Shown: positions 14,601-34,102, counted from the first letter of the stretch. The stretch: 47,344 bases of DNA from Selaginella moellendorffii (GCF_000143415.4 NW_003314372.1:74609-121952), one strand, 5' to 3'. The notes: generated by a model not told the origin, from the letters alone. Numbers and translations are program-made.

Positions 14601-15048
14601 TGTGATGGACGCCAGATATCTAGTGTCAAAGGCGAGAGAGAGGATCTTCGTAAGAAGCTGAGTGAGATCCACGTAAATGGAGCGTTTGCCAAGAAGTTGG
14701 AGACTCGTCCGGCGGAGCCAGCCGTTGAAGAAGTCGAGGTAAGGAACCACACTTCTATAGTTTTCTCTCCTTCTTCCTCGCTTGCTGCTAAGACATGGAT
14801 TTTCATCTTCGTCACAGATGAGAAGTATCTCCAGAGATTTTGATACCGGAGCTCTCAAGGCAACGCCGAGGAGGAGGAAAGGAGCGGCTTCTTCCGCGGG
14901 AGTTGTGGAGGAGGAGACGAGCAGTGGCAAGGACAAAGTGGTGGGAAAGCAGGGCAAGGCTTCCTCCGGGTTCCTGGGAGCAACCATTGTCGCGGTTTCT
15001 GTGAGCTCCTTCTTCGTCGGCTTACTGGTGGACAGGAAACTATTTTGA
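11638..15048 (+). CDS. Long coiled-coil, C-terminally tail-anchored protein (PICC/PICL-like)
   Basis: Exons 11638-11697, 11763-14561, 14616-14738, 14818-15048, all GT-AG and phase 0. E/K/A/S-rich heptads with an internal ~63-aa repeat (QEETLK...EAELR). C-terminal SRDFD motif, basic patch and TM segment (FLGATIVAVSVSSFFVGLLV) with a short basic tail. Confidence 0.85.
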
Positions 15049-15230
15049 GAGAGAGGAAAAAGAAAAAGTATATATTTTTTCTTATCTTTGCGGCTTTTCA
15101 TATTCTAAATTATTTGACATACAGATTGAAATATAATTCTATGTAGGCTTCTACTCATCAAACAAATGAAAACTCTCTGAAAACCCTGGGATCCAACTAT
15201 AAATTTTCTTTTGACAAAAATTTCCATGAA

Positions 15231-16070
15231 TCAGCAAGCTTGTATTTCTGGCAGGTCTGCCAGAAATCCCTCAATATCAAGAAACACATCGTTTAATTCT
15301 TGAGGTTGCCCCCAGTAATTGGTTTGCACATCTCCACCTTGAACCCCACCGACAAACTCCTGACTAACTCGATCAGCAAACAGTCCATCGCCAAGCTCAC
15401 TAGTTTGAGCAAACAGTTCTTGCTCACAATCACCAACGAACTCCTGACTAACTTGATCAGCAAACACTCCATCGCCAAGCTCGCTAGTTTGAGCAAACAC
15501 TTCTTGCACACAATCACCAACAGGCCCTTGACCCAAGCCTGGCAGAAGCTTCCAGTTTTGATCAAAACCCTCGTGAGAGAAAGGTTGGGCACAATCACCA
15601 ACACCATAACCTTGCTCCCAATAAATAGTTTGATCAAAACCCGCAACACAATCACCCATAACTTGAGATGATTCGCCTACAAATTCTTCCTGGACGACTG
15701 GAGCGATCTTGTCTACCCCATGGCTCTTTAAAGTTCTCTTATTTCCACCGGTGGGCGATAGCGATACGTCCCTTACCTTGCCACCTTGTGTCCATTTTCC
15801 CTTGCACGACCTGCAAATATAGCGCGGCTGGTCGCGCTTGCCAGTACTCTTCTCGTTGTTGTAGTAATCGAACCGCGTGTTGTAAGATTGGCACCTTGGG
15901 CACTGGTACACGTTGTCCGGAAGGTCGTGGTGCTCCCACACGCCGTACAAGTTTTGATCCCTCACCTCTTGGGCCGTGAGCTTGCAAGCCCTCTCGCTTC
16001 TCAGTCGACGCTTCTTTGTCGGCACCATGATACCGTCGTCTTCTCTACTTCTCTTGCTTGCTCTCGCCAT
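15231..16070 (-). CDS. Atypical Dof zinc-finger protein copy 1 (279 aa, intronless; 28-aa tail duplication)
   Basis: CPRCQSYNTRFDYYNN...QPRYICRSCKGKWTQGGKVRDV aligns to the Dof consensus CPRCxSxNTKFCYYNN...QPRYFCKxCRRYWTxGG. N-terminal basic NLS-like segment; acidic tail. Confidence 0.9.
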   Translation of the reverse strand: MARASKRSREDDGIMVPTKKRRLRSERACKLTAQEVRDQNLYGVWEHHDLPDNVYQCPRCQSYNTRFDYYNNEKSTGKRDQPRYICRSCKGKWTQGGKVRDVSLSPTGGNKRTLKSHGVDKIAPVVQEEFVGESSQVMGDCVAGFDQTIYWEQGYGVGDCAQPFSHEGFDQNWKLLPGLGQGPVGDCVQEVFAQTSELGDGVFADQVSQEFVGDCEQELFAQTSELGDGLFADRVSQEFVGGVQGGDVQTNYWGQPQELNDVFLDIEGFLADLPEIQAC

Positions 16071-16105
16071 AGCTCGTACGATCCTAAAGGACTTGACCTT
16101 ATTTA

Positions 16106-16128
16106 TTTATATATGCACTAAAGTAAAG
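16106..16128 (-). promoter_or_regulatory. TATA box (TATATAAA) and tandem TAAAG-TAAAG motif upstream of the Dof gene; conserved in all six copies
   Basis: tttatatatgcactaaagtaaagg lies 36-58 nt upstream of the Dof ATG in every unit. Confidence 0.65.
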
Positions 16129-16264
16129 GCTGGGTTAGCTTAAACAGCGTAGCTTCCCACTAATCCTGTGCGCTTTAAGGTAAGAATATCAGTCGAAAGA
16201 TGGATGGATATGCGGCATCCACATCGCAGCGGGCAAGAAGGAAAGAGTCTGTCGAGAAGCCAGG

Positions 16265-16960
16265 CATGCGCAAGTATTCTCATCACAATGTATGGCAAAT
16301 GGTTTGGCTGTAAATACAATCAAGGCGCTAAAGGTTGATGATGGAAAACTGGTGAAGCTCAAGATCTATCTATAGGCATTTCCATCCACGCTGTCCAGAG
16401 CGACGAGCTGTGGCTGTGACACAGATGCCTTTGTCAGCACCTTGTTGAAGATGGAAGTGCCGTGTTTGACAGGCGTTCATTCCTCCGACTATGATCCAGG
16501 CCTACACTGAAAAAACGGCGAACCACGCATTGTATCCAAGCATCAAACTGTTCCATGACACAGTTGAAAAATCCAGCCTGTCGAACACTCCACGAGCGTC
16601 GACACTCGGCTCGGGCTCGGCACACATGCGAATCAAAACCGCTCGGATTTTCACCGACTCAAACTTGATCACGCGTTTCTTCTCAGTCGCATCATCCAGT
16701 ACGCTATCTTCTTCGGTTGCCAGGAGGGAGCAGGCCTTCAACGCAGCCACAATCGTTCGAGGATGGCTGACAGTAAATAGTTCTCATGCGTGAAAACAAA
16801 TGGAGAGCGGAGCGCACGGGCTTGGTTCTCGAGTGGAGCTGTTTCCATTCATGGAACGATCCGGGGTTTTCTCACCTTTGTGGCTGCGTTGAAAGCTTGC
16901 GCTAGTTTGGATAGGCAAACTTGTCAAACTCCGTGCTTTAGAAGATGGCATGGCTATCGC
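16265..16960. pseudogene. Scrambled PLS-PPR gene fragment in the unit spacer (also ~19705-20040, ~23095-23760, ~26660-27360, ~30320-30720)
   Basis: + strand ILITMYGK, DGKLVKLK, SCGCDTDAFVSTLLKM, VAALKACASLD. - strand VAALKACSLLA...ARGVFDRLDFSTVSWNSLMLGY. Stops and frameshifts throughout. Confidence 0.75.
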
Positions 16961-17059
16961 TTTGGAACTCTTCTTTCGGATGGGGCTGAAAGGAGTCACG
17001 AGTGCTCATCCTCTCAACATGGTGACTTGTGAGGCAAACTCTTATTCCTGGTCTCCAGG

Positions 17060-17235
17060 AAATGATCGAAGACTCGTCTGGCGGAGCCAAACATAGAAGA
17101 ACTTGACGAGGTAACAAACACTTCTTAGTTTTCTCCTCTTGAGAAATGGATTTCCCTTGTTGTCACAGATCTACAGAGATTGTGATACTAGGGTTCTCAA
17201 GGCGGCTTCTCACGGAGGAGGCAACCACTGTCGCT
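17060..17235 (+). pseudogene. Decayed copy of the coiled-coil gene 3' end (exon 3 end, last intron, exon 4); also ~20145-20320, ~23830-24005, ~27460-27640, ~34620-34750
   Basis: agactcgtctggcggagcca...gag|gtaa...cacttcttagttttctcc...gtcacag|atctacagagattgtgatac...ctcaaggc...gcaaccactgtcgc aligns to 14701-14995. Confidence 0.8.
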
Positions 17236-18224
17236 TCACTTTTAGATATTCTATGTTATGTGCTTTTAATTACATGTACTTGCCAACATTTATGAGGAAT
17301 TTCGGGAACTCAGGATTATGTTATGTTAGAATATACTCAAACCACAAACCAAAATATTGCTTAATTTGATCCGCGGGCCCCACGACGGGATATGTTATGT
17401 TATGTTATCTACTTTAGAGGTCCCAAATGACCTAAAAAACATGAGCAAGGTGGTGGTACAGAATATGCCGCGGTATCAGACATTCTTTATACCTCCACCT
17501 TCCCGTTTTTTAAAGTAGCTGTAGCTCCCCTATCGTGGTGTTGGTAGGGACAGGGCAAAAGTATGTTGTACTACTGGTAGAAGTCACACATTCCAAGTCT
17601 GGATGCCGTTAATTACATTCTAGGGTGATGAGTTTATTCTCAATGTTCTTGCTCCTTGTTCTCTCAGTTGTCCCAGTGGCCTCATGCCTCTAGCATCTAA
17701 AAACATGTATTAGTGACAAGTAGGAACAATTGTAATAGCATAACTAACATTTTAGTGACTAGCTTTGTTGCAAGAGACCCTGATAGTGCGGGTACTTGCA
17801 CCAATCTTACATTATAAAAGCACTAAAGGTCGTGATTGTTTGATCTCCTTGAAAAAAGAGTAGTTTAGCTTTATTGGCTCCTAACCAGTCTTCGCTTGCC
17901 GAAATTCCTCTCAGATTGCTTATTTTACTTTTGGATAAAGTTCAAAATCGGAGAACTAGAATGGATCACCAAAAATTTCTTACAGTTAGAAGGAAGCAGA
18001 GAAGCTCCGGTCCTTGCCCTCAGGCTGACCAGATGTGCCTGGCAAATGCTGGCAGTGTGCTCCAGCAATCCATCTAGCATGGTGATGCTTGAGAACAGGC
18101 GGCAGAAATGCCTGACGACGAGGGTGTTCTAGTCAGTCCTACAAACCAGTCATGAAGAATCCTGGGGTTCGCATCGCAACAGATGCCCATGTTCAGCAAA
18201 AACTCCTAATTTGTATATTTTTAA

Positions 18225-18805
18225 ATGTGTGTGCAATATTTAGTTTGCTTAATAATAGTACTATTTCTATTTATTAGTGAATATACTTAAAATATACTTG
18301 GATACTCTGGGATATTCTACTATCTAATGGTTGTTATTCATTTAAATTAATCATGTATTTATAATTTATAAACATTCCTAAACACTTTCTAGCATATTTT
18401 AGTTTATTCTGAAAGCTGATATTTAATCTTGTGTTTATGAATTATAAACATGTTATAATCATAAAATTGATCAATATAATTAATGAATAATAAGCACTAT
18501 TATTAAGCAAACCAAGCTTTGCTGCATGCAATGCACAACAAATTTTTAATCTAGTTGATCAAATGGAAGTTTATAATTTATAAACACAAGATTAATCTTA
18601 TTATATATCAACCATTAAATAGTAGAATAAATTAGAATATAATAGAAACTGCTTGGGAAAGGTTATAATTTATAAATGTGTTTATAAATTATAAATTCAA
18701 GATTAAATATAAATTAATAACAACTGTTAAATGGTAGAATATCCCAGAAAATTCAAGTATATTCTAGATATATTCATTAACAAGTTTACTTAAGCAAACC
18801 AAAAA
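18225..18805. mobile_element. Nested pair of ~300-350 bp non-autonomous Helentron/Helitron2-like (HINE-like) elements
   Basis: A minus-strand element (5' end ttggtttgcttaag at ~18790-18805) is interrupted by a plus-strand family member ending in subterminal taagcaaacca, a hairpin and a T-run at 18547. Confidence 0.6.
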
Positions 18806-18859
18806 TTCTGAAAAAATTGGCAACTATATATAAGGGCTTTTGACAAAAATTTCCATGAA

Positions 18860-19612
18860 TCAGCAAGCTTGTATTTCTGGCAGGTCTGCCAAAAATCCCT
18901 CAATATCAAGAAACACATCATTGACTTCTTGAGGTTGCCCCCAGCAATTGGTTTGCACATCTCCACGTTGAACCAACTCCTGACTAACTTGATCAGCAAA
19001 CACTCCATCGCCAAGCTCGCTAGTTTGAGCAAACACTTCTTGCACACAATCACCAACAGGCCCTTGACCCAAGCCTGGCAGAAGCTCCCAATAACTGTTT
19101 TGATCAAAAGCCTCGTGAGATAAAGGTTGGGCACAATCACCAACACCATAACCTTGCTCCCAATAAGTAGTTTGATCAAAACCCACAACACAATTACCCA
19201 TAACTTGAGATAATTCGCCTACAAATTCTTCCTGGACGACTGGAGCGATCTTGTCTCCCCCATGGCTCTTTGAAGTTCTCTTATTTCCACCAGTGGGCGA
19301 TAGCGATACGACCCTTACCTGGCCACCTTGTGTCCATTTTCCCTTGCACGACCTACAAGCGTAGCGCGGCTGGTCGCGCTTGCCAGTACTCTTCTCGTTG
19401 TTGTAGTAATCGAACCGCGTGTTGTAAGATTGGCACCTTGGGCACTGGTACACGTTGTCCGGAAGGTCGTGGTGCTCCCACACGCCGTACAAGTTTTGAT
19501 CCCTCACCTCTTGGGCCGTGAGCTTGCAGGCCCTCTCGCTTCTCAGTCGACGCTTCTTTGTCAGCACCACTATACCATCGTCTTCTCTACTTCTCTTGCT
19601 TGCTCTTACCAT
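18860..19612 (-). CDS. Atypical Dof protein copy 2 (250 aa)
   Basis: Intact ORF with the same Dof-variant domain and a 3-aa in-frame tail deletion. Confidence 0.9.
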   Translation of the reverse strand: MVRASKRSREDDGIVVLTKKRRLRSERACKLTAQEVRDQNLYGVWEHHDLPDNVYQCPRCQSYNTRFDYYNNEKSTGKRDQPRYACRSCKGKWTQGGQVRVVSLSPTGGNKRTSKSHGGDKIAPVVQEEFVGELSQVMGNCVVGFDQTTYWEQGYGVGDCAQPLSHEAFDQNSYWELLPGLGQGPVGDCVQEVFAQTSELGDGVFADQVSQELVQRGDVQTNCWGQPQEVNDVFLDIEGFLADLPEIQAC

Positions 19613-21486
19613 AGCTCGTACGATCCTAAAGGACTTGACCCTATTTATTTATATATGCACTAAAGTAAAGGCTGGGTTAGCTTAAAAAGCGTAGATTCCC
19701 ACTAATAATACAATCAAGGCGCTAAAGGTTGATGATGGAAAACTGGTGAAGCTCAAGATCTATCTATAGGGCATTTCCATCCACGCTGTCCAGAGCGACG
19801 AGCTATGGCTGTGACACAGATGCCTTTGTCAGCACCTTGTTGAAGATGGAAGTGCCGTGTTTGACAGGCGTTCATTCCTCCGACTATGATCCAGGCCTAC
19901 CCTGAAACAACGGCGAGCCGCGCATTGTATCCAAGCATCAAACTGTTCCATGACACAGTTGAAAAATCCAGCCTGTCGAACACTCCACGAGCGTCGACAG
20001 CAAACTTGTCAAACTCCGTGCTTTAGAAGATGGCATGGCTATCGCTTTGGAACTCTTCTTTCGGACGGAGCTGAAAGGAGTCACGAGTGCTCATCCTTTC
20101 AACATGGTGACTTGTGGGGCAAACTCTTATTCCTGGTCTCCAGGAAATGATCGAAGACTCGTCTGGGGAGCCAAACGTTGAAGAACTTGACGAGGTAAGG
20201 AACACTTCTTAGTTTTCTCCTCTTCAGAAATGGATTGCCCTTGTTGTCACAGATCTACAGAGATTGTGATACTAGGGTTCTCAAGGCGGCTTCTCACGGA
20301 GGAGGCAACCACTGTCACTTCACTTTTAGATATTCTATGTTTAAAGTTCCGATTGCAATCTACTTGCCAACATTTATGAGGAGCTCAGAGGAATTTCCAG
20401 AACTCAAGATTATGTTATGTTAGAATACACACCAAAATATTGCTTAATTTGTTTATGTTAACTTATCTACTTTAGAGGTGGATATATTCTAAGTATATGC
20501 TCTCTAGATCCATATTTCTTGCTCCTTGTTCTCTCATTCTCTTCTTCAGTTGTCCCAGTATGCCTCCAGCAAGACCCTCTAAAAAACATGTATGAGTGAC
20601 AAGTAGGAACAATTGTAATAGCATAACTAGCAATTTAGTGGCTAGCTTTGTTGTCAGTCCACAAGAGACCCCGATAGTGCGGGTACCAATCTTCCCTTTT
20701 GTTATCAACAATATAAAAGCACTAAAGATCGTGATTGCTTTTGGAAAGTTTGATCTCCTTGAAAAAAGAGTAGTTTAGTTTTATTGGCTCCTAACCGCTC
20801 AGTCTTCGCTTGCCGAAATTCCTCTCAGATCGCTTATTTTACTTTTGGATAAAGTTCAAAATCAGAGAACTAGAATGGATCACCAAAGATTTCTTACAGT
20901 TAGAAGGAAGCAGAGTAGCTCCGGTCCTTGCCCTCAGGCTGACCAGGTAGAAGATTTGATGTGCCTGGCAAATGCTGGCAGTGTGCTCCAGCAATCCATC
21001 TAGCATGGTGGTGCTTGAGGACAGGCGGCAGAAATGCCTGACGATGAGGGTGTTCTAGTCAGTCCTACAAACCAGTCATGGAGAATCCTGGGGTGAGAAA
21101 TTTGGTCAGATGCCCATGTTCAGCAAAACCTCCTAATTTGTATATTTTTAAATGTGTGTTGCATGAATATTTAGTTTGCTTAGTAATAGTATTATTCCTA
21201 TTGGTTTGCTTCGTGGTAGTGAATATATTTAGAATATACTTAGATACTCTGGGAAACTAATGGCTGTTATTCATTTAAATTAATCATGTATTTATAATTT
21301 ATAAACATTCCTAAACGCTTTCTGGCATATTCTAGTTTATTCTGAAAGTTGATATTTAATCTTGTGTTTATAAATTATAAACATGTTATAATCATAACCT
21401 TTCAATTGATCAATATAATTAAAAAATAATAAGCATTATTATTAAGCAAACCAAGCTTTGCTGCATGCAATGCACAACAAATTTTT

Positions 21487-21839
21487 GGTTTGCTTAAGCA
21501 AACCTATAGGAGGATTGGGATGGTAATGAATATACCTAGAATATGCTTGAATATTCTAGGATATTCTACCATCTAACAGTTGTTATTTATTTAGATTAAT
21601 CTTGTATTTATAATTTATAAACATGTTTATAATTTATAAACTTTCTTAAACCCCTTCTAGTATATTCTTTTTGATTCTTTCATCTAATGGTTGATATGAA
21701 ATAAGATTAATCTTGTGTTTATAAATTACAAACATACTTATAATTATAAAGTTTATTTGATCAATTGGATTAATAAATAATAATAAAACTACTATTAAGC
21801 AAACCAAGCGTTGCTACATGCAAGGCGTAGCAATTTTTT
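21487..21839 (+). mobile_element. Best-preserved HINE-like element, inserted into the 3' T-run of another copy (21201-21486)
   Basis: 5' palindrome GGTTTGCTTAAGCAAACC (21487-21504); 3' subterminal TAAGCAAACCA; hairpin TTGCTAC-atgcaaggc-GTAGCAA (21811-21833); TTTTTT; no target-site duplication. Confidence 0.7.
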
Positions 21840-22140
21840 AATCTAGTTGATCAAATGGAAGTTTATAATTTATAAACACAAGATTAGTCTTATTATATAT
21901 CAACCATTAAATAGTAGAATAAATTAGAATAACTGCTTAGGAAAGTTTATATTTTATAAATGTGTTTATAAATTATAAATTCAAGATTAAATATAAATTA
22001 ATAACAACTGTTAAATGGTAGAATATCCCAGAAAATTCAAGTATATTCTAGATATTATCATTACCCTTACTTAAGAAAACCAAAAATTCTGAAAAAATTG
22101 GCAACTATGTATAAGGGCTTTTGAGAAAAATTTCCATGAA

Positions 22141-22902
22141 TCAGCAAGCTTGTATTTCTGGCAGGTCTGCCAGAAATCCCTCAATATCAAGAAACACATT
22201 ATTGAATTCTTGAGGTTGCCCCCAGCAATTGGTTTGCACATCTCCACGTTGAACCCCACCAACAAACTCCTGACTAACTTGATCAGCAAACACTCCATCG
22301 CCAAGCTCGCTAGTTTGAGCAAACACTTCTTGCACACAATCACCAACAGGCCCTTGACCCAAGGCTGGCAGAAGCTCCCAACAACTGTTTTGATCAAAAG
22401 CCTCGTGAGATAAAGGTTGGGCACAATCGCCAACACCATAACCTTGCTCCCAATAAATAGTTTGATCAAAACCCGCAACACAATCACCCATAACTTGAGA
22501 TGATTCGCCTACAAATTCTTCCTGGACGACTGGAGCGATCTTGTCTACCCCATGGCTCTTTAAAGTTCTCTTATTTCCACCGGTGGGCGATAGCGATACG
22601 TCCCTTACCTTGCCACCTTGTGTCCATTTTCCCTTGCACGACCTACAAATATAGCGCGGCTGGTCGCGCTTGCCAGTACTCTTCTCGTTGTTGTAGTAAT
22701 CGAACCGCGTGTTGTAAGATTGGCACCTTGGGCACTGGTACACGTTGTCGGGAAGGTCGTGGTGCTCCCACACGCCGTACAAGTTTTGATCCCTCACCTC
22801 TTGGGCCGTGAGCTTGCAAGCCCTCTCGCTTCTCAGTCGACGCTTCTTTGTCGGCACCATGATACCGTCGTCTTCTCTACTTCTCTTGCTTGCTCTCGCC
22901 AT
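22141..22902 (-). CDS. Atypical Dof protein copy 3 (253 aa)
   Basis: Intact ORF; N-terminal half identical to copy 1 at the protein level. Confidence 0.9.
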   Translation of the reverse strand: MARASKRSREDDGIMVPTKKRRLRSERACKLTAQEVRDQNLYGVWEHHDLPDNVYQCPRCQSYNTRFDYYNNEKSTGKRDQPRYICRSCKGKWTQGGKVRDVSLSPTGGNKRTLKSHGVDKIAPVVQEEFVGESSQVMGDCVAGFDQTIYWEQGYGVGDCAQPLSHEAFDQNSCWELLPALGQGPVGDCVQEVFAQTSELGDGVFADQVSQEFVGGVQRGDVQTNCWGQPQEFNNVFLDIEGFLADLPEIQAC

Positions 22903-25074
22903 AGCTCGTACGATCCTAAAGGACTTGACCTTATTTATTTATATATGCACTAAAGTAAAGGCTGGGTTAGCTTAAACAGCGTAGCTTCCCACTAATCCTG
23001 TGCGCTTTAAGGTAAGAATATCAGTCGAAAGATGGATGGATATGCGGCATCCACATCGCAGCGGGCAAGAAGGAAAGAGTCTGTCGAGAAGCCAGGCATG
23101 CGCAAGTATTCTCATCACAATGTATGGCAAATGGTTTGGCTGTAAATACAATCAAGGCGCTAAAGGTTGATGATGGAAAACTGGTGAAGCTCAAGATCTA
23201 TCTATAGGCATTTCCATCCACGCTGTCCAGAGCGACGAGCTGTGGCTGTGACACAGATGCCTTTGTCAGCACCTTGTTGAAGATGGAAGTGCCGTGTTTG
23301 ACAGGCGTTCATTCCTCCGACTATGATCCAGGCCTACACTGAAAAAACGGCGAACCACGCATTGTATCCAAGCATCAAACTGTTCCATGACACAGTTGAA
23401 AAATCCAGCCTGTCGAACACTCCACGAGCATCCACACTCGGCACAGGCTCGGCACACATGCGAATCAAAACCGCTCGGATTTTCACCGACTCAAACTTGA
23501 TCACGCGTTTCTTCTCAGTCGCATCATCCAGTACGCTATCTTCTTCGGTTGCCAGGAGGGAGCAGGCCTTCAACGCAGCCACAATCGTTCGAGGATGGCT
23601 GACAGTAAATAGTTCTCATGCGTGAAAACAAATGGAGAGCGGAGCGCACGGGCTTGGTTCTCGAGTGGAGCTGTTTCCATTCATGAAACGATCCGGGGTT
23701 TTCTCACCTTTGTGGCTGCGTTGAAAGCTTGCGCTAGTTTGGATAAGCAAACTTGTTGAAAGGAGTTACGAGTGCTCGTCCTTTCAACATGGTGACTTGT
23801 GAGGCAAACTCTTATTCCTGCTCTCCAGGAAATGATCGAAGACTCGTCTGGGGAGCCAAACGTAGAAGAACTTGACGAGGTAAGAAAAACTTCTTAGTTT
23901 TCTCCTCTTGAGAAGTGGATTTCCCTTGTTGTCACAGATCTGCAGAGATTGTGATACTAGGGTTCTCAAGGTGGCTTCTCACCGAGGAGGCAACCACTGT
24001 CGCTTCACTTTTAGATATTCTATGTTTAAAGTTCCGATTGCAATCTACTTGCCACAGAGGAATTTCGGGAACTCAAGATTATGCTATGTTAGAATATACT
24101 CAAACCACAAACCAAAATATTGCTTAATTTGTTTATGTTAACTTATCTACTTTAGAGGTGGATATATTCTAAGTATATGCTCTCTAGATCCATATTCTCC
24201 CATATGACCTAAAAAACATGAGAGTGTTGTTGTAGCTCCCCTATCGTGGTGTTGGTAGGGACAGGGCAAAAGTTGTACTACTGGTAGAAGTTACACATTC
24301 CAAGTCTGGATGCCGTTACATTCTAGGGTGATGAGTTTATTTTCAATGTTCTTGCTCCTTGTTCTCATTCTCTTTTTCAGTTGTCCCAGTGGTCTCCAAG
24401 ACCCTCTAAAAACATGTATTAGTGACAAGTAGGAACAATTGTAATAGCATAACTAGCATTTTAGTGATTAGCTTTGTTGTCAGTCCAAGTGTGTCTGATA
24501 GTGCGGGTACTTGCACCAATCTTCCCTTTTGTTATCAAAACAACATTATAAAAACACTAAAGGTCGTGATTGCTTTTGAAAGTTTGATCTCCTTGAAAAA
24601 AGAGAAGTTTAGTTTTTTTGGCTCCTAACCGCTCAGTCTTCGCTTGCCGAAATTCCTCTCAGATCGCTTATTTTACTTTTGGATAAAGTTCAAAATCGGA
24701 GAACTAGAATGGATCACCAAAGATTTCTTACAGTTAGAAGGAAGCAGAGTAGCTCCCGTCCTTGCCCTCAGGCTGACCAGGTGGAAGATTTGATAGTGTG
24801 CTCCAGCAATCCATCTAGCATGGTGGTGCTTGAGGACAGGCGGCAGAAATGCCTGACGACGAGGGTGTTCTACTCAGTCCCAAACCAGTCATGGAGAATC
24901 CTGGGGTGAGAAATTTGGTCCTCGAGATGCCCATGTTCAGCAAAAACTCCTGGTTTGTGTCATTCTCCCCTTCGTCATGACCCAGCCACATATGGCAGTT
25001 TCAAGAAGCTAAACAAGCCTCATATGAAGGGAGTCCAAAGCTAATTTGTATATTTTTATATGTGTGTTGCATGC

Positions 25075-25650
25075 ATAATATTTAGTTTGCTTAATAATAG
25101 TACTATTTCTATTTACTGGTTGGTAGTGAATATACTTAGAATATACTTGGATACTCTGGGATATTTTACTTTCTAATGGTTGTTATTCATTTAAATTAAT
25201 TATGTACTTATAATTTATAAACATTCCTAAACAATTTCTAGCATATTCTAGTTTGTTCTGAAAGTTGATATTTAATCTTGTGTTTATAAATTATAAACAT
25301 GTTATAATCATAACCTTCCAATTGATCAATATAATTAATAAATAATAAGCACTATTATTAAGCAAACCAAGCTTTGCTGCATGCAATGCACAACAAATTT
25401 TTAATCTAGTTGATCAAGTGGAAGTTTATAACTTATAAACACAAGATTAATCTTATTATATATCAACCATTAAATAGTAGAATAAATTAGAATAACTGCT
25501 TAGGAAAGTTTGTAACTTATAAATGTGTTTATAAATTATAAATTCAAGATTAAATATAAATTAATAACAACTGTTAAATTGTAGAATATCCCAGAAAATT
25601 CAAGTATATTCTAGATATATTCATTACCCTTACTTAAGAAAACCAAAAAT
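25075..25650. mobile_element. Nested HINE-like pair (unit 3 spacer)
   Basis: Same termini and hairpin as 18225-18805. Confidence 0.6.
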
Positions 25651-25703
25651 TCTGAAAAAATTAGCAACTATATATAAGGGCTTTTGACAAAAATTTCCAT
25701 AAA

Positions 25704-26465
25704 TCAGCAAGCTTGTATTTCTGGCAGGTCTGCCAGAAATCCCTCAATATCAAGAAACACATCATTGAATTCTTGAGGTTGCCCACAGCAATTGGTTTGC
25801 ACATCTCCACCTTGAACCCCACCAACAAACTCTTGACTAACTTGATCAGCAAACACTCCATCGCCAAGCTCGCTAGTTTGAGCAAACACTTCTTGCACAC
25901 AATCACCAACAGGCCCTTGACCCAAGCCTGGCAGAAGCTCCCAATAACTGTTTTGATCAAAAGCCTCGTGAGATAAACGTTGGGCACAATCACCAACACC
26001 ATAACCTTGCTCCCAATAAATAGTTTGATCAAAACCCGCAGCATAATCACCCATAACTTGAGATGATTCGCCTACAAATTCTTCCTGGACGACTGGAGCG
26101 ATCTTGTCTCCCCCATGGCTCTTTAAAGTTCTCTTATTTCCACCGGTGGGCGATAGCGATACGTCCCTTACCTTGCTACCTTGTGTCCATTTTCCCTTGC
26201 ACGACCTACAAGCGTAGCGCGGCTGGTCGCGCTTGCCAGTACTCTTCTCGTTGTTGTAGTAATCGAACCGCGTGTTGTAAGATTGGCACCTTGGGCACTG
26301 GTACACGTTGTCCGGAAGGTCGTGGTGCTCCCACACGCCGTACAAGTTTTGATCCCTCACCTCTTGGGCCGTGAGCTTGCAAGCCCTCTCGCTTCTCAGT
26401 CGACGCTTCTTTGTCGGCACCATGATACCGTCGTCTTCTCTACTTCTCTTGCTTGCTCTCGCCAT
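25704..26465 (-). CDS. Atypical Dof protein copy 4 (253 aa; WTQGS variant)
   Basis: Intact ORF; GG changed to GS after the zinc finger. Confidence 0.9.
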   Translation of the reverse strand: MARASKRSREDDGIMVPTKKRRLRSERACKLTAQEVRDQNLYGVWEHHDLPDNVYQCPRCQSYNTRFDYYNNEKSTGKRDQPRYACRSCKGKWTQGSKVRDVSLSPTGGNKRTLKSHGGDKIAPVVQEEFVGESSQVMGDYAAGFDQTIYWEQGYGVGDCAQRLSHEAFDQNSYWELLPGLGQGPVGDCVQEVFAQTSELGDGVFADQVSQEFVGGVQGGDVQTNCCGQPQEFNDVFLDIEGFLADLPEIQAC

Positions 26466-28689
26466 AGCCCGTACGATCCTAAAGGACTTGACCTTATTTA
26501 TTTATATATGCACTAAAGTAAAGGCTGGGTTAGCTTAAACAGCGTATATTCCCACTAATCCTGGACGGTTTAAGGTAAGAATATCAGTCGAAAGATGGAT
26601 GGATATGCGGCATCCACATCGCAGCGCGCAAGAAGAAAAGAGTCTGTCGAGAAGCCAGGCATGCGCAAGTATTCTCATCACAATGTATGGCAAATGGTTT
26701 GGCTGTAAATACAATCAAGGCGCTAAAGGTTGATGATGGAAAACTGGTGAAGCTCAAGATCAATCTATAGGCATTTCCATCCACGCTGTCCAGAGCGACG
26801 AGCTGTGGCTGTGACACAGATGCCTTTGTCAGCACCTTGTTGAAGATGGAAGTGCCGTGTTTGACAGGCGTTCATTCCTCCGACTATGATCCAGGCCTAC
26901 ACTGAAAAAACGGCGAGCCACGCATTGTATCCAAGCATCAAACTGTTCCATGACACAGTTAAAAAATCCAGCCTGTCGAACACTCCACGAGCGTCCACAC
27001 TCGGCACTCGGCACGGGCTCGGCACACATGCGAATCAAAACCGCTCGGATTTTCACCGACTCAAACTTGATCACGCGTTTCTTCTCAGTCGCATCATCCA
27101 GTACGCTATCTTCTTCGGTTGCCAGGAGGGAGCAGGCCTTCAACGTAGCCACAATCGTTCGAGGATGGCTGACAGTAAATAGTTCTCATGCGTGAAAACA
27201 AATTGAGAGCGGAGCGCACGGGCTTGGTTCTCGAGTGGAGCTGTTTCCATTCATGGAACGATCCGGGGTTTTCTCACCTTTGTGGCTGCGTTGAAAGCTT
27301 GCGCTAGTTTGGATAGGCAAACTTGTCAAACTCCGTGCTTTAGAAGATGGCATGGCTATCGCTTTGGAACTCTTCTTTCGGATGGAGCTGAAAGGTGTCA
27401 CGAGTGCTCATCCTCTCAACATGGTGACTTGTGAGGCAAACTCTTATTCCTGGTCTCCAGGAAATGATCGAAGACTCGTCTGGCGGAGCCAAACATAGAA
27501 GAACTTGACGAGGTAAGAAACACTTCTTAGTTTTCTCCTCTTGAGAAATGGATTTCCCTTGTTGTCACAGATCTACAGAGATTGTGATACTAGGGTTCTC
27601 AAGGCGGCTTCTCACAGAGGAGGCAACCACTGTCGCTTCACTTTTAGATATTATGTTTTGTGCTTTTAATTACATGTACTTGCCAACATTTATGGAATTT
27701 CGGGAACTCAAGATTATGTTATGTTAGAATATACTCAAACCACAAACCAAAATAGCTTAATTTGATCGGCGGGCCCCACGACGGGATATGTTATGTTATG
27801 TTATCTACTTTAGAGGTTATGCTCTCTAGATCCATATTCTCCCAAATGACCTAAAAAACATGAGCAAGGTGGTGGCACAGAATATGCCGCGGTATCAGAC
27901 ATTCTTTATACCTCCACCTTCCCGTTTTTTAAAGTAGCTGTAGCTCCCCTATCGTGGTGTTGGTAGGGACAGGGCAAAAGTATGTTGTACTACTGGTAGA
28001 AGTCACACATTCCAAGTCTGGATGCCGTCAATTACATTCTAGGGTGATGAGTTTATTCTCAATGTTCTTGCTCCTTGTTCTCTCATTCTCTTCTTCAGTT
28101 GTCCCAGTGGCCTCATGCCTCTAGCATCTAAAAACATGTATTAGTGACAAGTAGGAACAATTGTAATAGCATAACTAACATTTTAGTGACTAGCTTTGTT
28201 GTCAGTCCACAAGAGACCCTGATAGTGCGGGTACTTGCACCAATCTTACATTATAAAAGCACTAAAGGTCGTGATTGCTTTTGGAAAGTTTGATCTCCTT
28301 GAAAAAAGAATAGTTTAGTTTTTTTGGCTCCTAACCAGTCTTCGCTTGCCGAAATTCCTCTCAGATTGCTTATTTTACTTTTGGATAAAGTTCAAAATCG
28401 GAGAACTAGAATGGATCACCAAAGATTTCTTACAGTTAGAAGGAAGCAGAGAAGCTCCGGTCCTTGCCCTCAGGCTGACCAGGTAGAAGATTTGATGTGC
28501 CTGGCAAATGCTGGCAGTGTGCTCCAGCAATCCATCTAGCATGGTGATGCTTGAGAACAGGTGGCAGAAATGCCTGACGACAAGGGTGTTCTAGTCAATC
28601 CTACAAACCAGTCATGAAGAATCCTGGGGTGAGAAATTTTGCCCATGTTCAGCAAAAACTCCTAATTTGTATATTTTTAAAATGTGTGT

Positions 28690-29420
28690 GCAATATTTAG
28701 TTTGCTTAATAATAGTATTATTTCTATTTATTGGTTTGCTTAGTGGTAGTGAATATACTTAGAATATACTTGGATACTCTGGGATATTCTACTATCTAAT
28801 GGTTGTTATTCATTTAAATTAATCATGTATTTATAATTTATAAACATTCCTAAACACTTTCTAGCATATTTTAGTTTCTTCTGAAAGTTGATATTTAATC
28901 TTGTGTTTATGAATTATAAACATGTTATAATCATAAAATTGATCAATATAATTAATGAATAATAAGCACTATTATTAAGCAAACCAAGCTTTGCTGCATG
29001 CAATGCACAGCAAATTTTTAATCTAGTTGATCAAATGGAAGTTTATAATTTATAAACACAAGATTAATCTTATTATATATCAACCATTAAATAGTAGAAC
29101 AATTGATCAATATAATTAAAAAATAATAAGCATTATTATTAAGCAAACCAAGCTTTGCTGCATGCAATGCACAACAAATTTTTAATATAGTTGATCAAAT
29201 GGAAGTTTAAAATTTATAAACACAAGATTAGTCTTATTATATATCAACCATTAAATAGTAGAATAAATTAGAATAACTTTATATTTTATAAATGTGTTTA
29301 TAAATTATAAATTCAAGATTAAATATAAATTAATAACAACTGTTAAATGGTAGAATATCCCAGAAAATTCAAGTATATTCTAGATATATTCATTACCCTT
29401 ACTTAAGAAAACCAAAAATT
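28690..29420. mobile_element. Nested HINE-like pair with ~165 bp internal duplication (unit 4 spacer)
   Basis: Plus element starts ttggtttgcttag at 28731; hairpin tttgctg...cagcaaa at 28990-29014; the element end plus flank is repeated at ~29101-29260. Confidence 0.6.
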
Positions 29421-29472
29421 CTGAAAAAATTGGCAACTATATATAAGAGCTTTTGACAAAAATTTCCATGAA

Positions 29473-30225
29473 TCAGCAAGCTTGTATTTCTGGCAGGTCT
29501 GCCAGAAATCCCTCAATATCAAGAAACACATCATTGAATTCTTGAGGTTGCCCCCAGCAATTGGTTTGCACATCTCCACGTTGAACCTCACCAACAAACT
29601 CCTGACTAACTTGATCAGCAAACACTCCATCGCCAAGCTCGCTAGCTTGAGCAAACACTTCTTGCACACAATCACCAACAGGTCCTTGACCCAAGGCTGG
29701 CAGAAGCTCCCAACAACTGTTTTGATCAAAAGCCTCAGGTTGGGCACAATCACCAACACCATAACCTTGCTCCCAATAAATAGATTGATCAAAACCCACA
29801 ACACAATTACCCATAACTTGAGATAATTCGCCTACAAATTCTTCCTGGACGACTGGAGTGATCTTGTCTCCCCCATGGCTCTTTGAAGTTCTCTTATTTC
29901 CACCAGTGGGCGATAGCGATACGTTCCTTACCTTGCCACCTTGTGTCCATTTTCCCTTGCACGACCTACAAGCGTAGCGCGGCTGGTCGCGCTTGCCAGT
30001 ACTCTTCTCGTTGTTGTAGTAATCGAACCGCGTGTTGTAAGATTGGCACCTTGGGCACTGGTACACGTTGTCCGGAAGGTCGTGGTGCTCCCACATGCCG
30101 TACAAGTTTTGATCCCTCACCTCTTGGGCCGTGAGCTTGCAGGCCCTCTCGCTTCTCAGTCGACGCTTCTTTGTCAGCACCATGATACCATCGTCTTCTC
30201 TACTTCTCTTGCTTGCTCTCGCCAT
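29473..30225 (-). CDS. Atypical Dof protein copy 5 (250 aa)
   Basis: Intact ORF with a 3-aa in-frame deletion (LSH). Confidence 0.9.
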   Translation of the reverse strand: MARASKRSREDDGIMVLTKKRRLRSERACKLTAQEVRDQNLYGMWEHHDLPDNVYQCPRCQSYNTRFDYYNNEKSTGKRDQPRYACRSCKGKWTQGGKVRNVSLSPTGGNKRTSKSHGGDKITPVVQEEFVGELSQVMGNCVVGFDQSIYWEQGYGVGDCAQPEAFDQNSCWELLPALGQGPVGDCVQEVFAQASELGDGVFADQVSQEFVGEVQRGDVQTNCWGQPQEFNDVFLDIEGFLADLPEIQAC

Positions 30226-30720
30226 AGCTCGTACGATCCTAAAGGACTTGACCTTATTTATTTATATATGCACTAAAGTAAAGGCTGGGTTAGCTTAAAA
30301 AGCGTAGATTCCCACTAATAATACAATCAAGGCGCTAAAGGTTGATGATGGAAAACTGGTGAAGCTCAAGATCAATCTATAGGCATTTCCATCCACGCTG
30401 TCCAGAGCGACGAGCTGTGGCTGTGACACAGATGCCTTTGTCAGCACCTTGTTGAAGATGGAAGTGCCGTGTTTGACAGGCGTTCATTCCTCCGACTATG
30501 ATCCAGGCCTACACTGAAAAAACGGCGAGCCGCACATTGTATCCAAGCATCAAACTGTTCCATGACACAGTCGAAAAATCCAGCCTGTCGAACACTCCAC
30601 GAGCGTCCACACTCGGCACGGGCTCGGCACACACGCGAATCAAAACCGCTCGGATTTTCACCGACTCAAACTTGACCACGCGTTTCTTCTCAGTCGCATC
30701 ATCCAGTACGCTATCTTCTT

Positions 30721-33163
30721 CTCGAGAAGAATGCGAAGGATTCTCTCGAGGAGGTTGAAACGTATAAGAAGAACGTTTCGGTCCAAGAGGAATAGGCTAA
30801 GGAGTGGATGGAAAAAGAGAAAGATGTTGAGCGTCTTCTTCAAGAAGCTCAGGCGAGAGGAGATGCTGCTGAAGAAAGCAGCAAATCATGGCAGGCCGAA
30901 TGCGAAGACTTGAAAGAAAAGGTGGCAGCCGCTTCCAAAATTGAGGCGATCTTGAAGGAAACAGAAGCTCAACTACAGCTTCTTCAACAGACGGCAGCTG
31001 ACGCCGAGAGCAAGATCACGGCATTGGAGTCCAAGTTGCGCTCCGCAGAGGAATCTGCCGCAGGCCACGAAGGTGATGCTCAAAAGCATCTGATGAAGGT
31101 GGCGGAACTTAGCGAGAGCCTGACAAGTATCGAAGCCATTGCCGCTGCTTCTGAAGAAAAGCTTAAGTCGAGCGAGCTTGTGATTAGTGGCTTGCGGAGT
31201 GATTTGGAAGAGGCAAAGTCAACAGCAGAGAAACACGTGGCGACTGCAGCTGGCATTCAGGCAAAGCACGACGATCTTCAAAAGGAACTCCATGAGAAGC
31301 TGAGCCTGGCCGACGAGAAATACCAAAACTACGAGCGAAGCTTGGAAGAGTCCTCGGCAACGACCTCGCAGTTAAAAGAGTCTCTCCTGGCTCTTCAAAG
31401 TCAAGCTAACGAAGCCGCAGAATTGACTACAAAACTGCAAGCGGAGCTTCAAGATTCCAAGGACAGGGAAGCGAAGCTCGCTGAGCAGCTCGAAGCGTCC
31501 AGAGCAGCGGGTGAAAAGCAAGAGGCAGATTATAAAGCGGCATTGAATGAGCTTCAAGAATCACTGACGAGACAGACGGAGGAGGCGTCCTCTAGACACG
31601 AAGCTCTTGCGAGAGATTTGAGCTCCGGCGTGGAAAGAGAGAAGGAACTTGAACACAAGCTTCGGACGGTGGAGGAGACGTCTGCGATTCACGAGAAGTC
31701 CAGCAACGAGTATAGCCAGAAATCTGCGCAGCTCGAGGACAAGCTGCGTGAAATCCAGGCAGAACTTTCCACTCACGCGGCAAAGGCTTCCGAGCTCGAA
31801 GGAGTTGTGGAGAGCTCTCGTCAAATGCATGTGACACTTCAAGGGAGCGTCGAAGCTGCCGAGAGCAAATCTGCGCATTACGAAGAGCTCGCCAACGTCT
31901 CCAACAAGAAGGTTACGGAGCTGGGGGAGGAGATGTCGAGTTTACATTCGAAACTGGCATCTCTAGAGAAGGTTCTGGCGAGCCAGGAAGAAACTCTGAA
32001 GGCGGCTGTTGACACCGAGGCGGAGCTACGTCAACAGCTCAAGCTCGCAGAAGAAACTTCAGCAATGCACGAGGCAACAGCAGGCGAACGAGAAAAGGTG
32101 GCCTCGGAAAGAGAGCAGGAGCTCTCGGCTGTGAACTCCAAGCTGACAGCTTTGAAAGAGACCTTGGCTGGCCAAGAGGAGACTCTCAAGTCGGCTTTCC
32201 AAGCCGAGGCAGAACTGCGAGGCAAGCTTTCGAGCGCAGAAGAAGCTACGGCAAAGCATCAGGCTGACGCAGGGGAGAGCCAGAGAGCCGCAGCGGAGAA
32301 GATCACCGCTCTGGAGAGTACCATCGAGAAGCTGGCGGAGAAGCTGGCTAATACGGAGGAGGTGCTCGAGGCCACCAAACAAGAGGCTGCGAGATCCAAA
32401 GACGCTGAAAGTAAGAAGGTGCAAGAGCTCGAGAAGGAAGCCGAGGCTATGGCATCAAACTTTCAAGCAGAGCTCGTGAAGGTCCAAGGTGTGGCGAGCT
32501 CTCTGGAGGAAAAACTGGACGAAGCAGCTCGACTCATTTCTGAGCAGGAGAAGACGATCTCGCGAATGCAGGAGAGCGAGGCCCAGCAGCGAGATGGCTA
32601 CGCATCGGACACCAAGTCGCTCCTCGCCAAGCTAAGCGCGATGAGCGAAGAGTTTTCCAAGGAAAAGCATAATGAGGTAACTCTTGCTTGGTCTTCTTCT
32701 TTCCTTCTAATACTTTGTGATGGACGCCAGATATCTAGTGTCAAAGGCGAGAGAGAGGATCTTCGTAAGAAGCTGAGTGAGATCCACGTAAATGGAGCGT
32801 TTGCCAAGAAGTTGGAGACTCGTCCGGCGGAGCCAGCCGTTGAAGAAGTCGAGGTAAGGAACCACACTTCTATAGTTTTCTCTCCTTCTTCCTCGCTTGC
32901 TGCTAAGACATGGATTTTCATCTTCGTCACAGATGAGAAGTATCTCCAGAGATTTTGATACCGGAGCTCTCAAGGCAACGCCGAGGAGGAGGAAAGGAGC
33001 GGCTTCTTCCGCGGGAGTTGTGGAGGAGGAGACGAGCAGTGGCAAGGACAAAGTGGTGGGAAAGCAGGGCAAGGCTTCCTCCGGGTTCCTGGGAGCAACC
33101 ATTGTCGCGGTTTCTGTGAGCTCCTTCTTCGTCGGCTTACTGGTGGACAGGAAACAATTTTGA
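30721..33163 (+). pseudogene. 5'-truncated duplicate of the coiled-coil gene; ORF open from ATG 30808 and TM exon retained
   Basis: Near-identical to 12597-15048. Lacks the promoter and first ~300 codons; CAG changed to TAG just before ATG 30808; 9-nt in-frame deletion. Confidence 0.8.
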
Positions 33164-33340
33164 GAGAGAGAAAGAAAAAGTATATATTTTTTCTTATCTT
33201 TGCGGCTTTTCATATTCTAAATTATTTGACATACAGATTGAAATATAATTCTATGTAGGCTTCTACTCATCAAACAAATGAAAACTCTCTGGAGACCCTG
33301 GGATCCAACTATAAATTCTTTTAAAAAAAATTTCCATGAA

Positions 33341-34102
33341 TCAGCAAGCTTGTATTTCTGGCAGGTCTGCCAGAAATCCCTCAATATCAAGAAACACATC
33401 GTTGAATTCTTGAGGTTGCCCCCAGCAATTGGTTTGCGCATCTCCACCTTGAACCCCACCAAGAAACTCCTGACTAACTTGATCAGCAAACACTCCATCG
33501 CCAAGTTCACTAGTTTGAGCAAACAGTTCTTGCTCACAATCACCAACAGGCCCTTGACCCAAGCCTGGCAGAAGCTCCCAATAACTGTTTTGATCAAAAG
33601 CCTCGTGAGATACAGGTTGGGCACAATCACCAACACCATAACCTTGCTCCCAATAAGTAGTTTGATCAAAACCCACAACAAAATCACCCATAGCTTGAGA
33701 TGATTCGCCTACAAATTCTTCCTGGACGACTGGAGCGATCTTGTCTCCCCCATGGCTCTTTAAAGTTCTCTTATTTCCACCAGTGGGCGATAGCGATACG
33801 TCCCTTACCTTGCCACCTTGTGTCCATTTTCCCTTGCACGACCTACAAGCGTAGCGCGGCTGGTCGCGCTTGCCAGTACTCTTCTCGTTGTTGTAGTAAT
33901 CGAACCGCGTGTTGTAAGATTGGCACCTTGGGCACTGGTACACGTTGTCCGGAAGGTCGTGGTGCTCCCACACGCCGTACAAGTTTTGATCCCTCACCTC
34001 TTGGGCCGTGAGCTTGCAGGCCCTCTCGCTTCTCAGTCGACGCTTCTTTGTCAGCACCACGATACCATCGTCTTCTCTACTTCTCTTGCTTGCTCTCGCC
34101 AT
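33341..34102 (-). CDS. Atypical Dof protein copy 6 (253 aa)
   Basis: Intact ORF; like copy 1, it is convergent with a coiled-coil gene 3' end. Confidence 0.9.
   Translation of the reverse strand: MARASKRSREDDGIVVLTKKRRLRSERACKLTAQEVRDQNLYGVWEHHDLPDNVYQCPRCQSYNTRFDYYNNEKSTGKRDQPRYACRSCKGKWTQGGKVRDVSLSPTGGNKRTLKSHGGDKIAPVVQEEFVGESSQAMGDFVVGFDQTTYWEQGYGVGDCAQPVSHEAFDQNSYWELLPGLGQGPVGDCEQELFAQTSELGDGVFADQVSQEFLGGVQGGDAQTNCWGQPQEFNDVFLDIEGFLADLPEIQAC

What the first reader, a model, noticed from the sequence alone, without database searches (positions are those of the whole stretch)
15231..34102. Macrosatellite of intronless transcription-factor genes: six intact atypical Dof ORFs in ~3.5 kb tandem units (D4Z4/DUX4-like architecture)
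Seen: each unit has one compact TATA-preceded, intronless ORF with an NLS-like segment, a Dof-variant finger and an acidic tail. All six ORFs are open and every length difference between them (250/253/279 aa) is in-frame, while the spacers carry arbitrary indels, inversions and dead gene fragments. Established: mammalian DUX4/Dux are intronless TFs with C-terminal activation domains in ~3-5 kb macrosatellites, silenced except in brief developmental windows. Inference: this may be a plant-lineage analogue, a dosage-amplified, repeat-silenced TF array for burst expression (spore, gamete or zygote). The analogy is architectural only; no homology is implied.
Basis: partly seen in the sequence, partly recalled or inferred. 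Interest (0 to 1): 0.88.

Follow-up and report, generated by a model that had tools for sequence, protein, structure and literature searches.

The report
Tandem Dof transcription-factor genes in Selaginella
A spikemoss (Selaginella moellendorffii) scaffold carries six intact, recently duplicated copies of an unusual Dof-type transcription-factor gene in a row; this is a real young tandem gene cluster that varies in copy number, and nothing found here shows the proposed DUX4-like silencing.

Summary
Six intact minus-strand ORFs of 250-279 aa lie 3.3-3.9 kb apart, and each matches the Pfam Dof domain (E about 1e-24). The window is Selaginella moellendorffii. The genes are already in databases as unnamed "Dof-type domain-containing" proteins.

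- **Origin.** The array looks like a tandem gene cluster built by unequal crossing-over. One duplication also copied the 3' part of the neighbouring coiled-coil gene.
- **Copy number.** The allelic haplotype (98.3-98.5% identical on both flanks) has only 3 copies.
- **Family size.** I saw 21 copies in the nine other stretches fetched plus the window; 20 are intact.
- **Selection.** All 11 ORF indels are in frame, against 7 of 24 upstream. There are no stop codons in about 180 substitutions. Omega is 0.46 in the NLS+Dof part (p=0.012). Protein-level constraint is weak overall (omega 0.72).
- **Finger.** It has all Dof-invariant residues plus a 4-residue insert (x25 spacing). Its model best matches the CDF1 Dof-DNA structure. 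A single-copy sister gene has the canonical x21 spacing.
- **DUX4 analogy.** It is architectural at most. Spacers are only 89-93% alike, intronlessness is ancestral, and dispersal was DNA-level. Three RNA-seq runs gave no reads on copies 3 and 4, without a positive control, so expression and silencing stay untested.

Other notes of this scan flag Dof-like arrays elsewhere in this genome.

The parts
15231..16070 (-). Dof copy 1 (279 aa), next to the 3' end of the intact coiled-coil gene. It carries an in-frame 84-bp tandem duplication at 15347-15522.
   Evidence: allelic partner L002_10001, also 279 aa
18860..19612 (-). Dof copy 2 (250 aa)
   Evidence: sister to L002_6827 in the tree
22141..22902 (-). 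Dof copy 3 (253 aa). Copy 1 with its upstream flank (15431-16924) matches copy 3 (22257-23756) at 98.7%.
25704..26465 (-). Dof copy 4 (253 aa)
29473..30225 (-). Dof copy 5 (250 aa). Copies 4-5 together match copies 1-2 at about 95%, which points to a two-unit duplication.
33341..34102 (-). Dof copy 6 (253 aa), next to the duplicated coiled-coil fragment
22903..23094 (-). Proximal promoter of copy 3, given as the example. About 120-190 bp upstream is conserved in all copies at all loci, with a TATA-like motif 33-49 nt before the ATG. The same segment lies upstream of the other five ORFs.
30720..33340 (+). Copy of the 3' part of the flanking coiled-coil gene, carried into the array. It is 97.7% identical to 12596-15230, with the junction at 30720/30721. 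A 716-aa ORF (30808-32958) is kept.
11586..14843 (+). Parent coiled-coil gene (long ORF) bounding the array on the left
21522..22065 (.). Imperfect palindrome (arms about 210 bp, 83% identical) just downstream of copy 3, given as an example of the spacer inversions

Best explanation
This is a young, copy-number-variable tandem cluster of a Selaginella moellendorffii-specific Dof subfamily. It grew by repeated unequal crossing-over. One event used a breakpoint in the neighbouring coiled-coil gene and so carried its 3' part into the array; another copied two units at once. Each unit is a self-contained gene. It has a conserved TATA-containing proximal promoter of 120-190 bp, an intronless ORF and a short 3' flank. 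The ORF encodes a bipartite NLS, a Dof zinc ribbon with a 4-residue loop insert, a fast-evolving repeat-rich middle, and a conserved acidic-hydrophobic tail that probably activates transcription. Selection keeps the ORFs open and the DNA-binding part conserved, so the products are most likely working nuclear DNA-binding proteins. Shown here: the array anatomy, the 6-versus-3 haplotype difference, Dof homology and fold, and frame and stop-codon constraint. Inferred: the unequal-crossover mechanism, the activator role, and low or restricted expression.
For: Identity and organism: (SELMODRAFT proteins, assembly GCA_000143415.2). Array map and the coiled-coil junction. Allelic haplotype: both flanks are collinear at 98.25% over 11.3 kb and 98.48% over 5.9 kb, but only 3 Dof copies lie between them. 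No window unit is more than 96.5% identical to any unit of that haplotype, so the six are not merged haplotypes. Twenty of 21 copies are intact. Eleven of 11 ORF indels are multiples of 3, against 7 of 24 in 230 bp upstream. There are no stops in about 180 substitutions, although 4.6% of random mutations would create one. Omega is 0.715 for the whole ORF (p=0.043), 0.46 for NLS+Dof (p=0.012) and 0.83 for the C-terminal half (not significant). The promoter is conserved. All Dof-invariant residues are kept. The model's best PDB match is 8xuf_C, the CDF1 Dof domain bound to DNA, TM 0.76 by target. Window and allelic copies form one clade, which indicates local expansion. Tandem duplication is very common in this genome: 6693 tandemly duplicated genes (PMC5750206).
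Against: Protein-level constraint is weak: omega is 0.72 overall and the C-terminal half cannot be told from neutral. No RNA reads fell on copies 3 and 4 in three RNA-seq runs, and 13 runs guessed to be RNA hold none of the ORF's words, so function is not shown by expression. Gene conversion could mimic part of the ORF conservation. Tandem duplicates in Selaginella are reported to be poor in transcription factors (PMC5750206), so this cluster goes against the trend.
Confidence: 0.72

Rival explanations
1. DUX4/D4Z4-like macrosatellite: a dosage-amplified TF array that is kept silent by repeat-induced heterochromatin and fires briefly in spores, gametes or the zygote.
For: Tandem kb-sized units each carry one intronless TF ORF. 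Copy number is polymorphic. There were no reads in three RNA-seq runs, and only one run (X24, guessed to be RNA) holds 21% of the ORF's words. CpG observed/expected in the array is 0.55-0.79, against 0.9-1.0 in neighbouring genes. ORF integrity is selected although vegetative expression is not detected.
Against: There are only 6 units and they are heterogeneous (spacers 89-93% identical). The family also occurs as singletons and pairs elsewhere. Every unit has its own conserved TATA promoter. Intronlessness is ancestral, since the sister gene P0004 is also intronless. The excess of CpG transitions is not significant (18% against 11%, p=0.14). The RNA test had no positive control.
Confidence: 0.12
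2. Young duplicates drifting towards pseudogenes: the ORFs are open only because the copies are recent or are homogenised by gene conversion.
For: Pairwise dS is only 0.03-0.06. Some window pairs have omega of 0.9-1.35. The C-terminal half gives omega 0.83, not significantly below 1. No expression was detected. One copy at another locus is frameshifted (L003, second copy).
Against: Eleven of 11 indels are in frame (about 6e-6 if a third would be by chance) and there are no stops against roughly 9 expected. Omega in the DNA-binding part is 0.46, p=0.012. ORFs are more conserved than their flanks.
Confidence: 0.1
3. Cargo of a mobile element: the roughly 1-kb Dof cassette is spread by a transposon or retroelement, and the array is a by-product.
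For: The family is dispersed on at least 7 scaffolds and shares only a short core. A Ty3/gypsy pol gene lies about 5 kb from the Dof pair in L006. An earlier scan note (s1-341459) reads a Dof pair as cargo inside a reverse transcriptase gene.
Against: Dispersed copies at loci B, C and D all carry the same cytochrome P450 fragment just upstream, and some carry the coiled-coil fragment downstream. That pattern indicates DNA-level segmental duplication. I noticed no terminal repeats or poly(A) at the core ends when reading the boundary sequences, but I ran no formal search for TIRs, LTRs or target-site duplications. The two kinds of 3' flank are diverged versions of one sequence rather than a sharp element end. 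In L006 the Dof pair lies upstream of the protease-RT-RNase H-integrase-chromodomain run, not inside it.
Confidence: 0.04
4. Assembly artefact: the six copies are mis-joined haplotypes or paralogous loci.
For: The assembly is an older one that keeps both haplotypes as separate scaffolds.
Against: All six units differ from each other (at most 98.7% identical) and from the three units of the other haplotype (at most 96.5%). Both flanks are collinear with the other haplotype. Mis-assembly of repeats usually collapses copies rather than adding them (general knowledge).
Confidence: 0.02

Closest known systems
[quoted passage not shown] Arabidopsis CDF1 (PDB 8xuf)
   Same: Pfam PF02701 is hit well above its cut-off. 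All 20 columns that are invariant in a 50-sequence Dof alignment are kept, the four Cys ligands included. The predicted zinc-ribbon fold best matches the CDF1 Dof-DNA complex.
   Different: The spacing is C-x2-C-x25-C-x2-C because of a 4-residue insert (STGK). A 3-residue insert follows the finger. FCYYNN becomes FDYYNN and RRYW becomes KGKW. The regions outside the finger have no relatives beyond S. moellendorffii in the 1.84 billion representative proteins searched.
Single-copy S. moellendorffii gene annotated 'dof zinc finger protein DOF3.1-like' (P0004, GL377568.1)
   Same: It is 49% identical. It shares the pre-finger motif, FDYYNN, the K-x-W variant, WGQPQE-type repeats and the intronless structure.
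   Different: It has the canonical x21 spacing, is single-copy in an ordinary gene neighbourhood, and has a different C-terminal end.
Tandemly arrayed genes formed by unequal crossing-over (in plants, for example the CBF/DREB1 clusters; from general knowledge)
   Same: Same-orientation paralogues lie a few kb apart. A flanking-gene fragment was carried in at a duplication junction. Copy number differs between haplotypes. Local copies group together in the tree.
   Different: It is a transcription-factor cluster in a genome where tandem duplicates are reported to be poor in TFs (PMC5750206). The paralogues also evolve fast at the protein level.
Human D4Z4/DUX4 and mouse Dux macrosatellites (from general knowledge)
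   Same: Tandem units of about 3.3-3.9 kb each hold one intronless TF ORF with a C-terminal acidic region, and copy number is polymorphic.
   Different: There are 6 units rather than tens to hundreds. The units are heterogeneous and AT-rich rather than near-identical and GC-rich. Each unit has its own TATA promoter. There is no sign of retrogene origin, and silencing and burst expression are untested.

Membership tests
Dof transcription factors (PF02701) | Significant match to the Dof domain profile above the curated cut-off | tested here: met
   E 1e-24 and 85-87 bits against a cut-off of 26.6, for the three copies scanned. The other copies are 92-100% identical in this part.
Dof transcription factors (PF02701) | Four Cys zinc ligands and the invariant residues of the domain (CPRC, S, T, F, Y, NN, QPR, C, C, WT, GG, R) | tested here: met
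   All 20 columns that are invariant in the 50-sequence alignment are kept.
Dof transcription factors (PF02701) | Canonical C-x2-C-x21-C-x2-C spacing | tested here: not met
   The spacing is x25, from a 4-residue insert after YYNNEK. The sister gene P0004 has x21. Membership therefore rests on descent, with the spacing as a derived variant.
Dof transcription factors (PF02701) | Dof zinc-ribbon fold | tested here: met
   The AlphaFold2 model has pLDDT 69-88 across the finger and a low mean of 65 because of its disordered ends. Its best and only significant PDB match is 8xuf_C, the CDF1 Dof domain on DNA: TM 0.76 by target, rmsd 2.6 A.
Dof transcription factors (PF02701) | Binds DNA with an AAAG core | not testable with these tools
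   This needs DAP-seq, EMSA or protein-binding microarrays.
Tandemly arrayed genes from unequal crossing-over | Adjacent same-strand paralogues whose duplication junctions carry flanking sequence | tested here: met
   Six same-strand copies. The junction at 30720/30721 joins spacer sequence to the middle of the coiled-coil gene. Copies 1-2 match copies 4-5 as a two-unit block.
Tandemly arrayed genes from unequal crossing-over | Copy-number difference between alleles with collinear flanks | tested here: met
   Six against three copies between flanks that are 98.25% and 98.48% identical.
D4Z4/DUX4-like macrosatellite | Many near-identical kb-sized units | tested here: not met
   Six units. Spacers are 89-93% identical with many indels and inversions, and the fifth spacer shares only 17-18% with the others.
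D4Z4/DUX4-like macrosatellite | ORF derived from a retroposed mRNA | tested here: not met
   The single-copy sister gene is also intronless. Dispersed copies carry promoter sequence and a P450 fragment, which indicates DNA-level duplication.
D4Z4/DUX4-like macrosatellite | Repeat-induced heterochromatin or silencing | not testable with these tools
   Only proxies were available. CpG observed/expected is 0.55-0.79 against 0.9-1.0 nearby. CpG transitions are 18% against 11%, p=0.14.
D4Z4/DUX4-like macrosatellite | Brief expression in germline or early embryo, silent elsewhere | tested here: inconclusive
   No reads on copies 3-4 in three RNA-seq runs, of which 12% was read, with no positive control and unknown tissues. 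One run guessed to be RNA holds 21% of the ORF's words.

The most novel reading that the evidence does not exclude
The array and its dispersed relatives could be a fast-evolving, copy-number-polymorphic set of Dof activators. They would be silent in vegetative tissue and switched on only in a narrow reproductive or embryonic window. That would be a lycophyte counterpart of animal early-embryo TF arrays (Dux, Zscan4, Obox) or of the rapidly evolving type I MADS genes of angiosperms, and the x25 finger might give a shifted DNA specificity.
Probability: 0.12. Interest if true: 0.6.

Novelty: new member of a known kind. Interest (0 to 1): 0.3.

Why it matters
Selaginella has no whole-genome duplication in its history, so new regulators must come from local duplication. 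Tandem duplicates there are nevertheless reported to be poor in transcription factors (PMC5750206). This cluster goes against that trend:

- It is a species-restricted Dof subfamily with a modified finger.
- I saw about 20 intact copies across the two assembled haplotypes.
- It shows a 6-versus-3 copy difference within one plant.
- It shows clear selection to keep the reading frame.

The cluster could be used to study how a TF family expands despite dosage-balance constraints, and whether a loop insert changes Dof DNA recognition. As found, it remains an ordinary tandem gene expansion rather than a new kind of system.

Tried and rejected
- **Transposon cargo.** I compared unit boundaries across loci. 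The apparent sharp end 23 nt after the stop is only two diverged versions of the same 3' flank. Dispersed copies share a P450 fragment upstream. The gypsy element in L006 lies 5 kb away.
- **Spacer gene fragments.** tblastn with the window's P450, PPR, LRR, kinase and coiled-coil proteins found only the coiled-coil fragment. Pfam on spacer ORFs gave nothing significant. A PPR-like look of 23334-23582 is my visual impression only.
- **Expression.** The single read-laying run gave no reads on the ORFs but had no positive control.
- **Methylation proxies.** These were inconclusive.
- **Literature.** No paper names these genes or describes the array. No held paper on the 8xuf structure was found. 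The Banks 2011 genome paper is not held.
- **Spurious hit.** P0019, with 19 matched stretches in the representative search, is a low-complexity repeat protein.
Full report
**What is there**

Their ATG-to-ATG spacing is 3542, 3290, 3563, 3760 and 3877 bp. The three copies scanned match Pfam PF02701 (Dof zinc ribbon) at E about 1e-24 and 85-87 bits, against a cut-off of 26.6.

The ORFs are 94.1-97.9% identical to each other. The spacers are 89-93% identical, with 27-69 gap openings per comparison and several inverted pieces. The 279-aa form carries an in-frame 84-bp tandem duplication. A TATA-like motif lies 33-49 nt before every ATG, inside a proximal promoter of 120-190 bp that is conserved in every copy at every locus.

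**Organism and database status**

A protein search returns only Selaginella moellendorffii entries, named 'hypothetical protein SELMODRAFT_...' or 'Dof-type domain-containing protein'. Two of the six window ORFs are in the collection as exact sequences. The genes are thus already predicted but unnamed. I found no paper that mentions their identifiers or describes the array.

**How the array was built**

Window 12596-15437 covers the 3' part of a long coiled-coil gene plus the 3' end of Dof copy 1. It recurs at 30720-33547 with 97.7% identity. At 30720/30721 the spacer upstream of copy 5 joins directly onto the middle of the coiled-coil gene. So one duplication had a breakpoint inside the flanking gene.

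- Copies 1-2 with their spacer match copies 4-5 at about 95%, which points to a two-unit duplication.
- Copy 1 with its upstream flank matches copy 3 at 98.7%.
- In a codon tree the six window copies and the three allelic copies form one clade.

These features fit repeated unequal crossing-over.

**Copy-number difference between haplotypes**

Scaffold GL377640.1 is collinear with the window on both sides of the array:

- 98.25% over 11.3 kb on the P450 and coiled-coil side
- 98.48% over 5.9 kb on the LRR-kinase side

Between these flanks it holds only three Dof copies and no coiled-coil fragment: about 9 kb, against about 20 kb in the window. No window unit is more than 96.5% identical to a unit of that scaffold, and no two window units exceed 98.7%. 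The six copies are therefore not merged haplotypes. The 3 kb next to the array (34295-37364) is only 91-92% identical between the haplotypes.

**The family elsewhere**

Further copies lie on GL377600.1 and GL377606.1 (three copies on the latter), GL377576.1 and GL377588.1 (pairs 1.3 kb apart), twice on GL377704.1, and at a second site on GL377640.1 (a pair).

In all I saw 21 copies, of which 20 are intact. The only broken one is a frameshifted second copy on GL377576.1, whose allelic partner is open. Dispersed copies carry the same cytochrome P450 fragment just upstream, and some carry the coiled-coil fragment downstream. That indicates DNA-level segmental duplication rather than retroposition or transposon capture. 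A Ty3/gypsy element near one pair lies 5 kb away.

**Selection**

| Test | Result | Call |
|---|---|---|
| ORF indels across 17 copies | 11 of 11 are multiples of three, all in the C-terminal half | 33 |
| Indels in 230 bp upstream | 7 of 24 are multiples of three | 33 |
| Chance of 11 of 11 in frame, if one third would be | about 6e-6 | my calculation |
| Substitutions on the codon tree | 0.71 per codon, about 180 in all | 21 |
| Random mutations that would create a stop | 4.6%, so about 9 expected; none seen | 52 |
| Omega, whole ORF | 0.715 (p=0.043 against 1) | 24, 31 |
| Omega, NLS + Dof part | 0.46 (p=0.012) | 24, 31 |
| Omega, C-terminal half | 0.83 (not significant) | 24, 31 |
| Mean pairwise dN/dS (Nei-Gojobori) | 0.44 | 20 |
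| Codon columns with amino-acid changes | N-terminus 13%, finger 16%, middle 36%, last 32 residues 19% | 52 |

The genes are kept open and the DNA-binding part is constrained, but the proteins evolve fast. As a local contrast, the duplicated coiled-coil fragment differs from its parent with dS 0.043 and omega 0.18.

**The finger**

In an alignment with 49 other Dof domains, all 20 invariant columns are kept. This family alone has a 4-residue insert between the two Cys pairs (x25 instead of x21) and a 3-residue insert after the finger. It also has FDYYNN in place of FCYYNN and KGKW in place of RRYW.

An AlphaFold2 model is confident across the finger (pLDDT 69-88), although its mean is 65. Its best and only significant PDB match is 8xuf_C, the CDF1 Dof domain bound to DNA, with TM 0.76 by target.

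The closest relative is a single-copy gene on GL377568.1 that is also intronless. It is 49% identical and has the same pre-finger motif and FDYYNN, but the canonical x21 spacing. An exhaustive search of 1.84 billion representative proteins found no full-length relative outside this species; every other hit covers the finger only.

**Expression and silencing**

- Three raw RNA-seq runs labelled with this species, each about 12% read, gave no reads on copies 3 and 4. The few reads laid were on a spacer piece and ran on into unlike sequence. There was no positive control and the tissues are unknown.
- Thirteen runs guessed to be RNA hold practically none of the ORF's words. One such run, X24, holds 21%, which is about what a 95%-identical paralogue would give.
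- CpG observed/expected is 0.65-0.79 in the ORFs and 0.55-0.72 in the spacers, against 0.9-1.0 in neighbouring genes.
- Transitions at CpG sites are not significantly enriched: 18% against 11%, p=0.14.

Low or restricted expression is therefore plausible, and repeat-induced silencing remains untested.

**Comparison with known systems**

By descent the proteins are Dof factors with a derived finger spacing. The locus meets the criteria for a tandemly arrayed gene cluster formed by unequal crossing-over. It fails the tested D4Z4-type criteria of many near-identical units and retrogene origin. Polymorphic copy number is met, and chromatin state and stage-specific expression could not be tested.

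Tandem duplication is very common in S. moellendorffii (6693 such genes), but few of those genes are transcription factors (PMC5750206). That makes the cluster mildly unusual.

**Verdict**

This is a real, tidy and copy-number-variable tandem expansion of a lineage-specific atypical Dof gene, and a new member of a known kind. The DUX4 analogy is architectural only and is unsupported beyond that.

Noticed in passing
window 30808-32958 (+): The duplicated 3' fragment of the coiled-coil gene keeps a 716-aa ORF. It differs from its parent with dS 0.043 but dN 0.008 (omega 0.18). It may therefore be a live truncated gene rather than a dead fragment. Similar 367-378 aa models sit beside Dof copies in L001 and L008.
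   Followed up: partly
window 34295-37364 versus L010 6827-9885: The 3 kb next to the array is only 91-92% identical between the two haplotypes, while the flanks further out are 98.3-98.5% identical. Part of it also occurs in L001 at 95.8%. This may reflect exchange with paralogous loci.
   Followed up: no
window 1-10480: A cytochrome P450 cluster: one intact 502-aa gene (6826-8334, minus strand) plus fragments. It includes a 1.5-kb inverted duplication (1-1529 against 7882-6364, 97.8%) and several direct repeats.
   Followed up: partly
window 37524-40419 (+) and 42592-45274 (-): An LRR receptor-like kinase and a PPR (E-motif) gene flank the array on the right. The allelic annotation also places an ornithine/arginine decarboxylase-type gene between them.
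   Followed up: partly
window 27327-27356 and 23936-24054: One 152-nt contig from a run guessed to be RNA (X14) joins these two spacer pieces. Three reads of run X9 and one of X8 end at about 27356 and run on into unlike sequence. The spacers seem to hold exon-like pieces of a gene that is expressed elsewhere.
   Followed up: no
P0020, P0022-P0026 (representative library): Proteins of unknown source with two to four Dof fingers in one chain (227-1565 aa; P0024 and P0026 show two). This is at odds with the 'one finger' name. They could be real multi-Dof proteins or gene models that fuse tandem genes.
   Followed up: no
L006 16947-20216: A Ty3/gypsy chromovirus pol region (protease, RT, RNase H, integrase, chromodomain) lies about 5 kb downstream of the Dof pair. 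A P450 fragment lies directly upstream of the first Dof copy (9322-9727), as in L004 and L005.
   Followed up: partly
window 28937-29263 and 2882-3105: Two short tandem duplications: a 164-bp unit, 2 copies, 95% matching, in the spacer below copy 5; and a 110-bp unit, 2 copies, 100% matching, in the P450 region.
   Followed up: no
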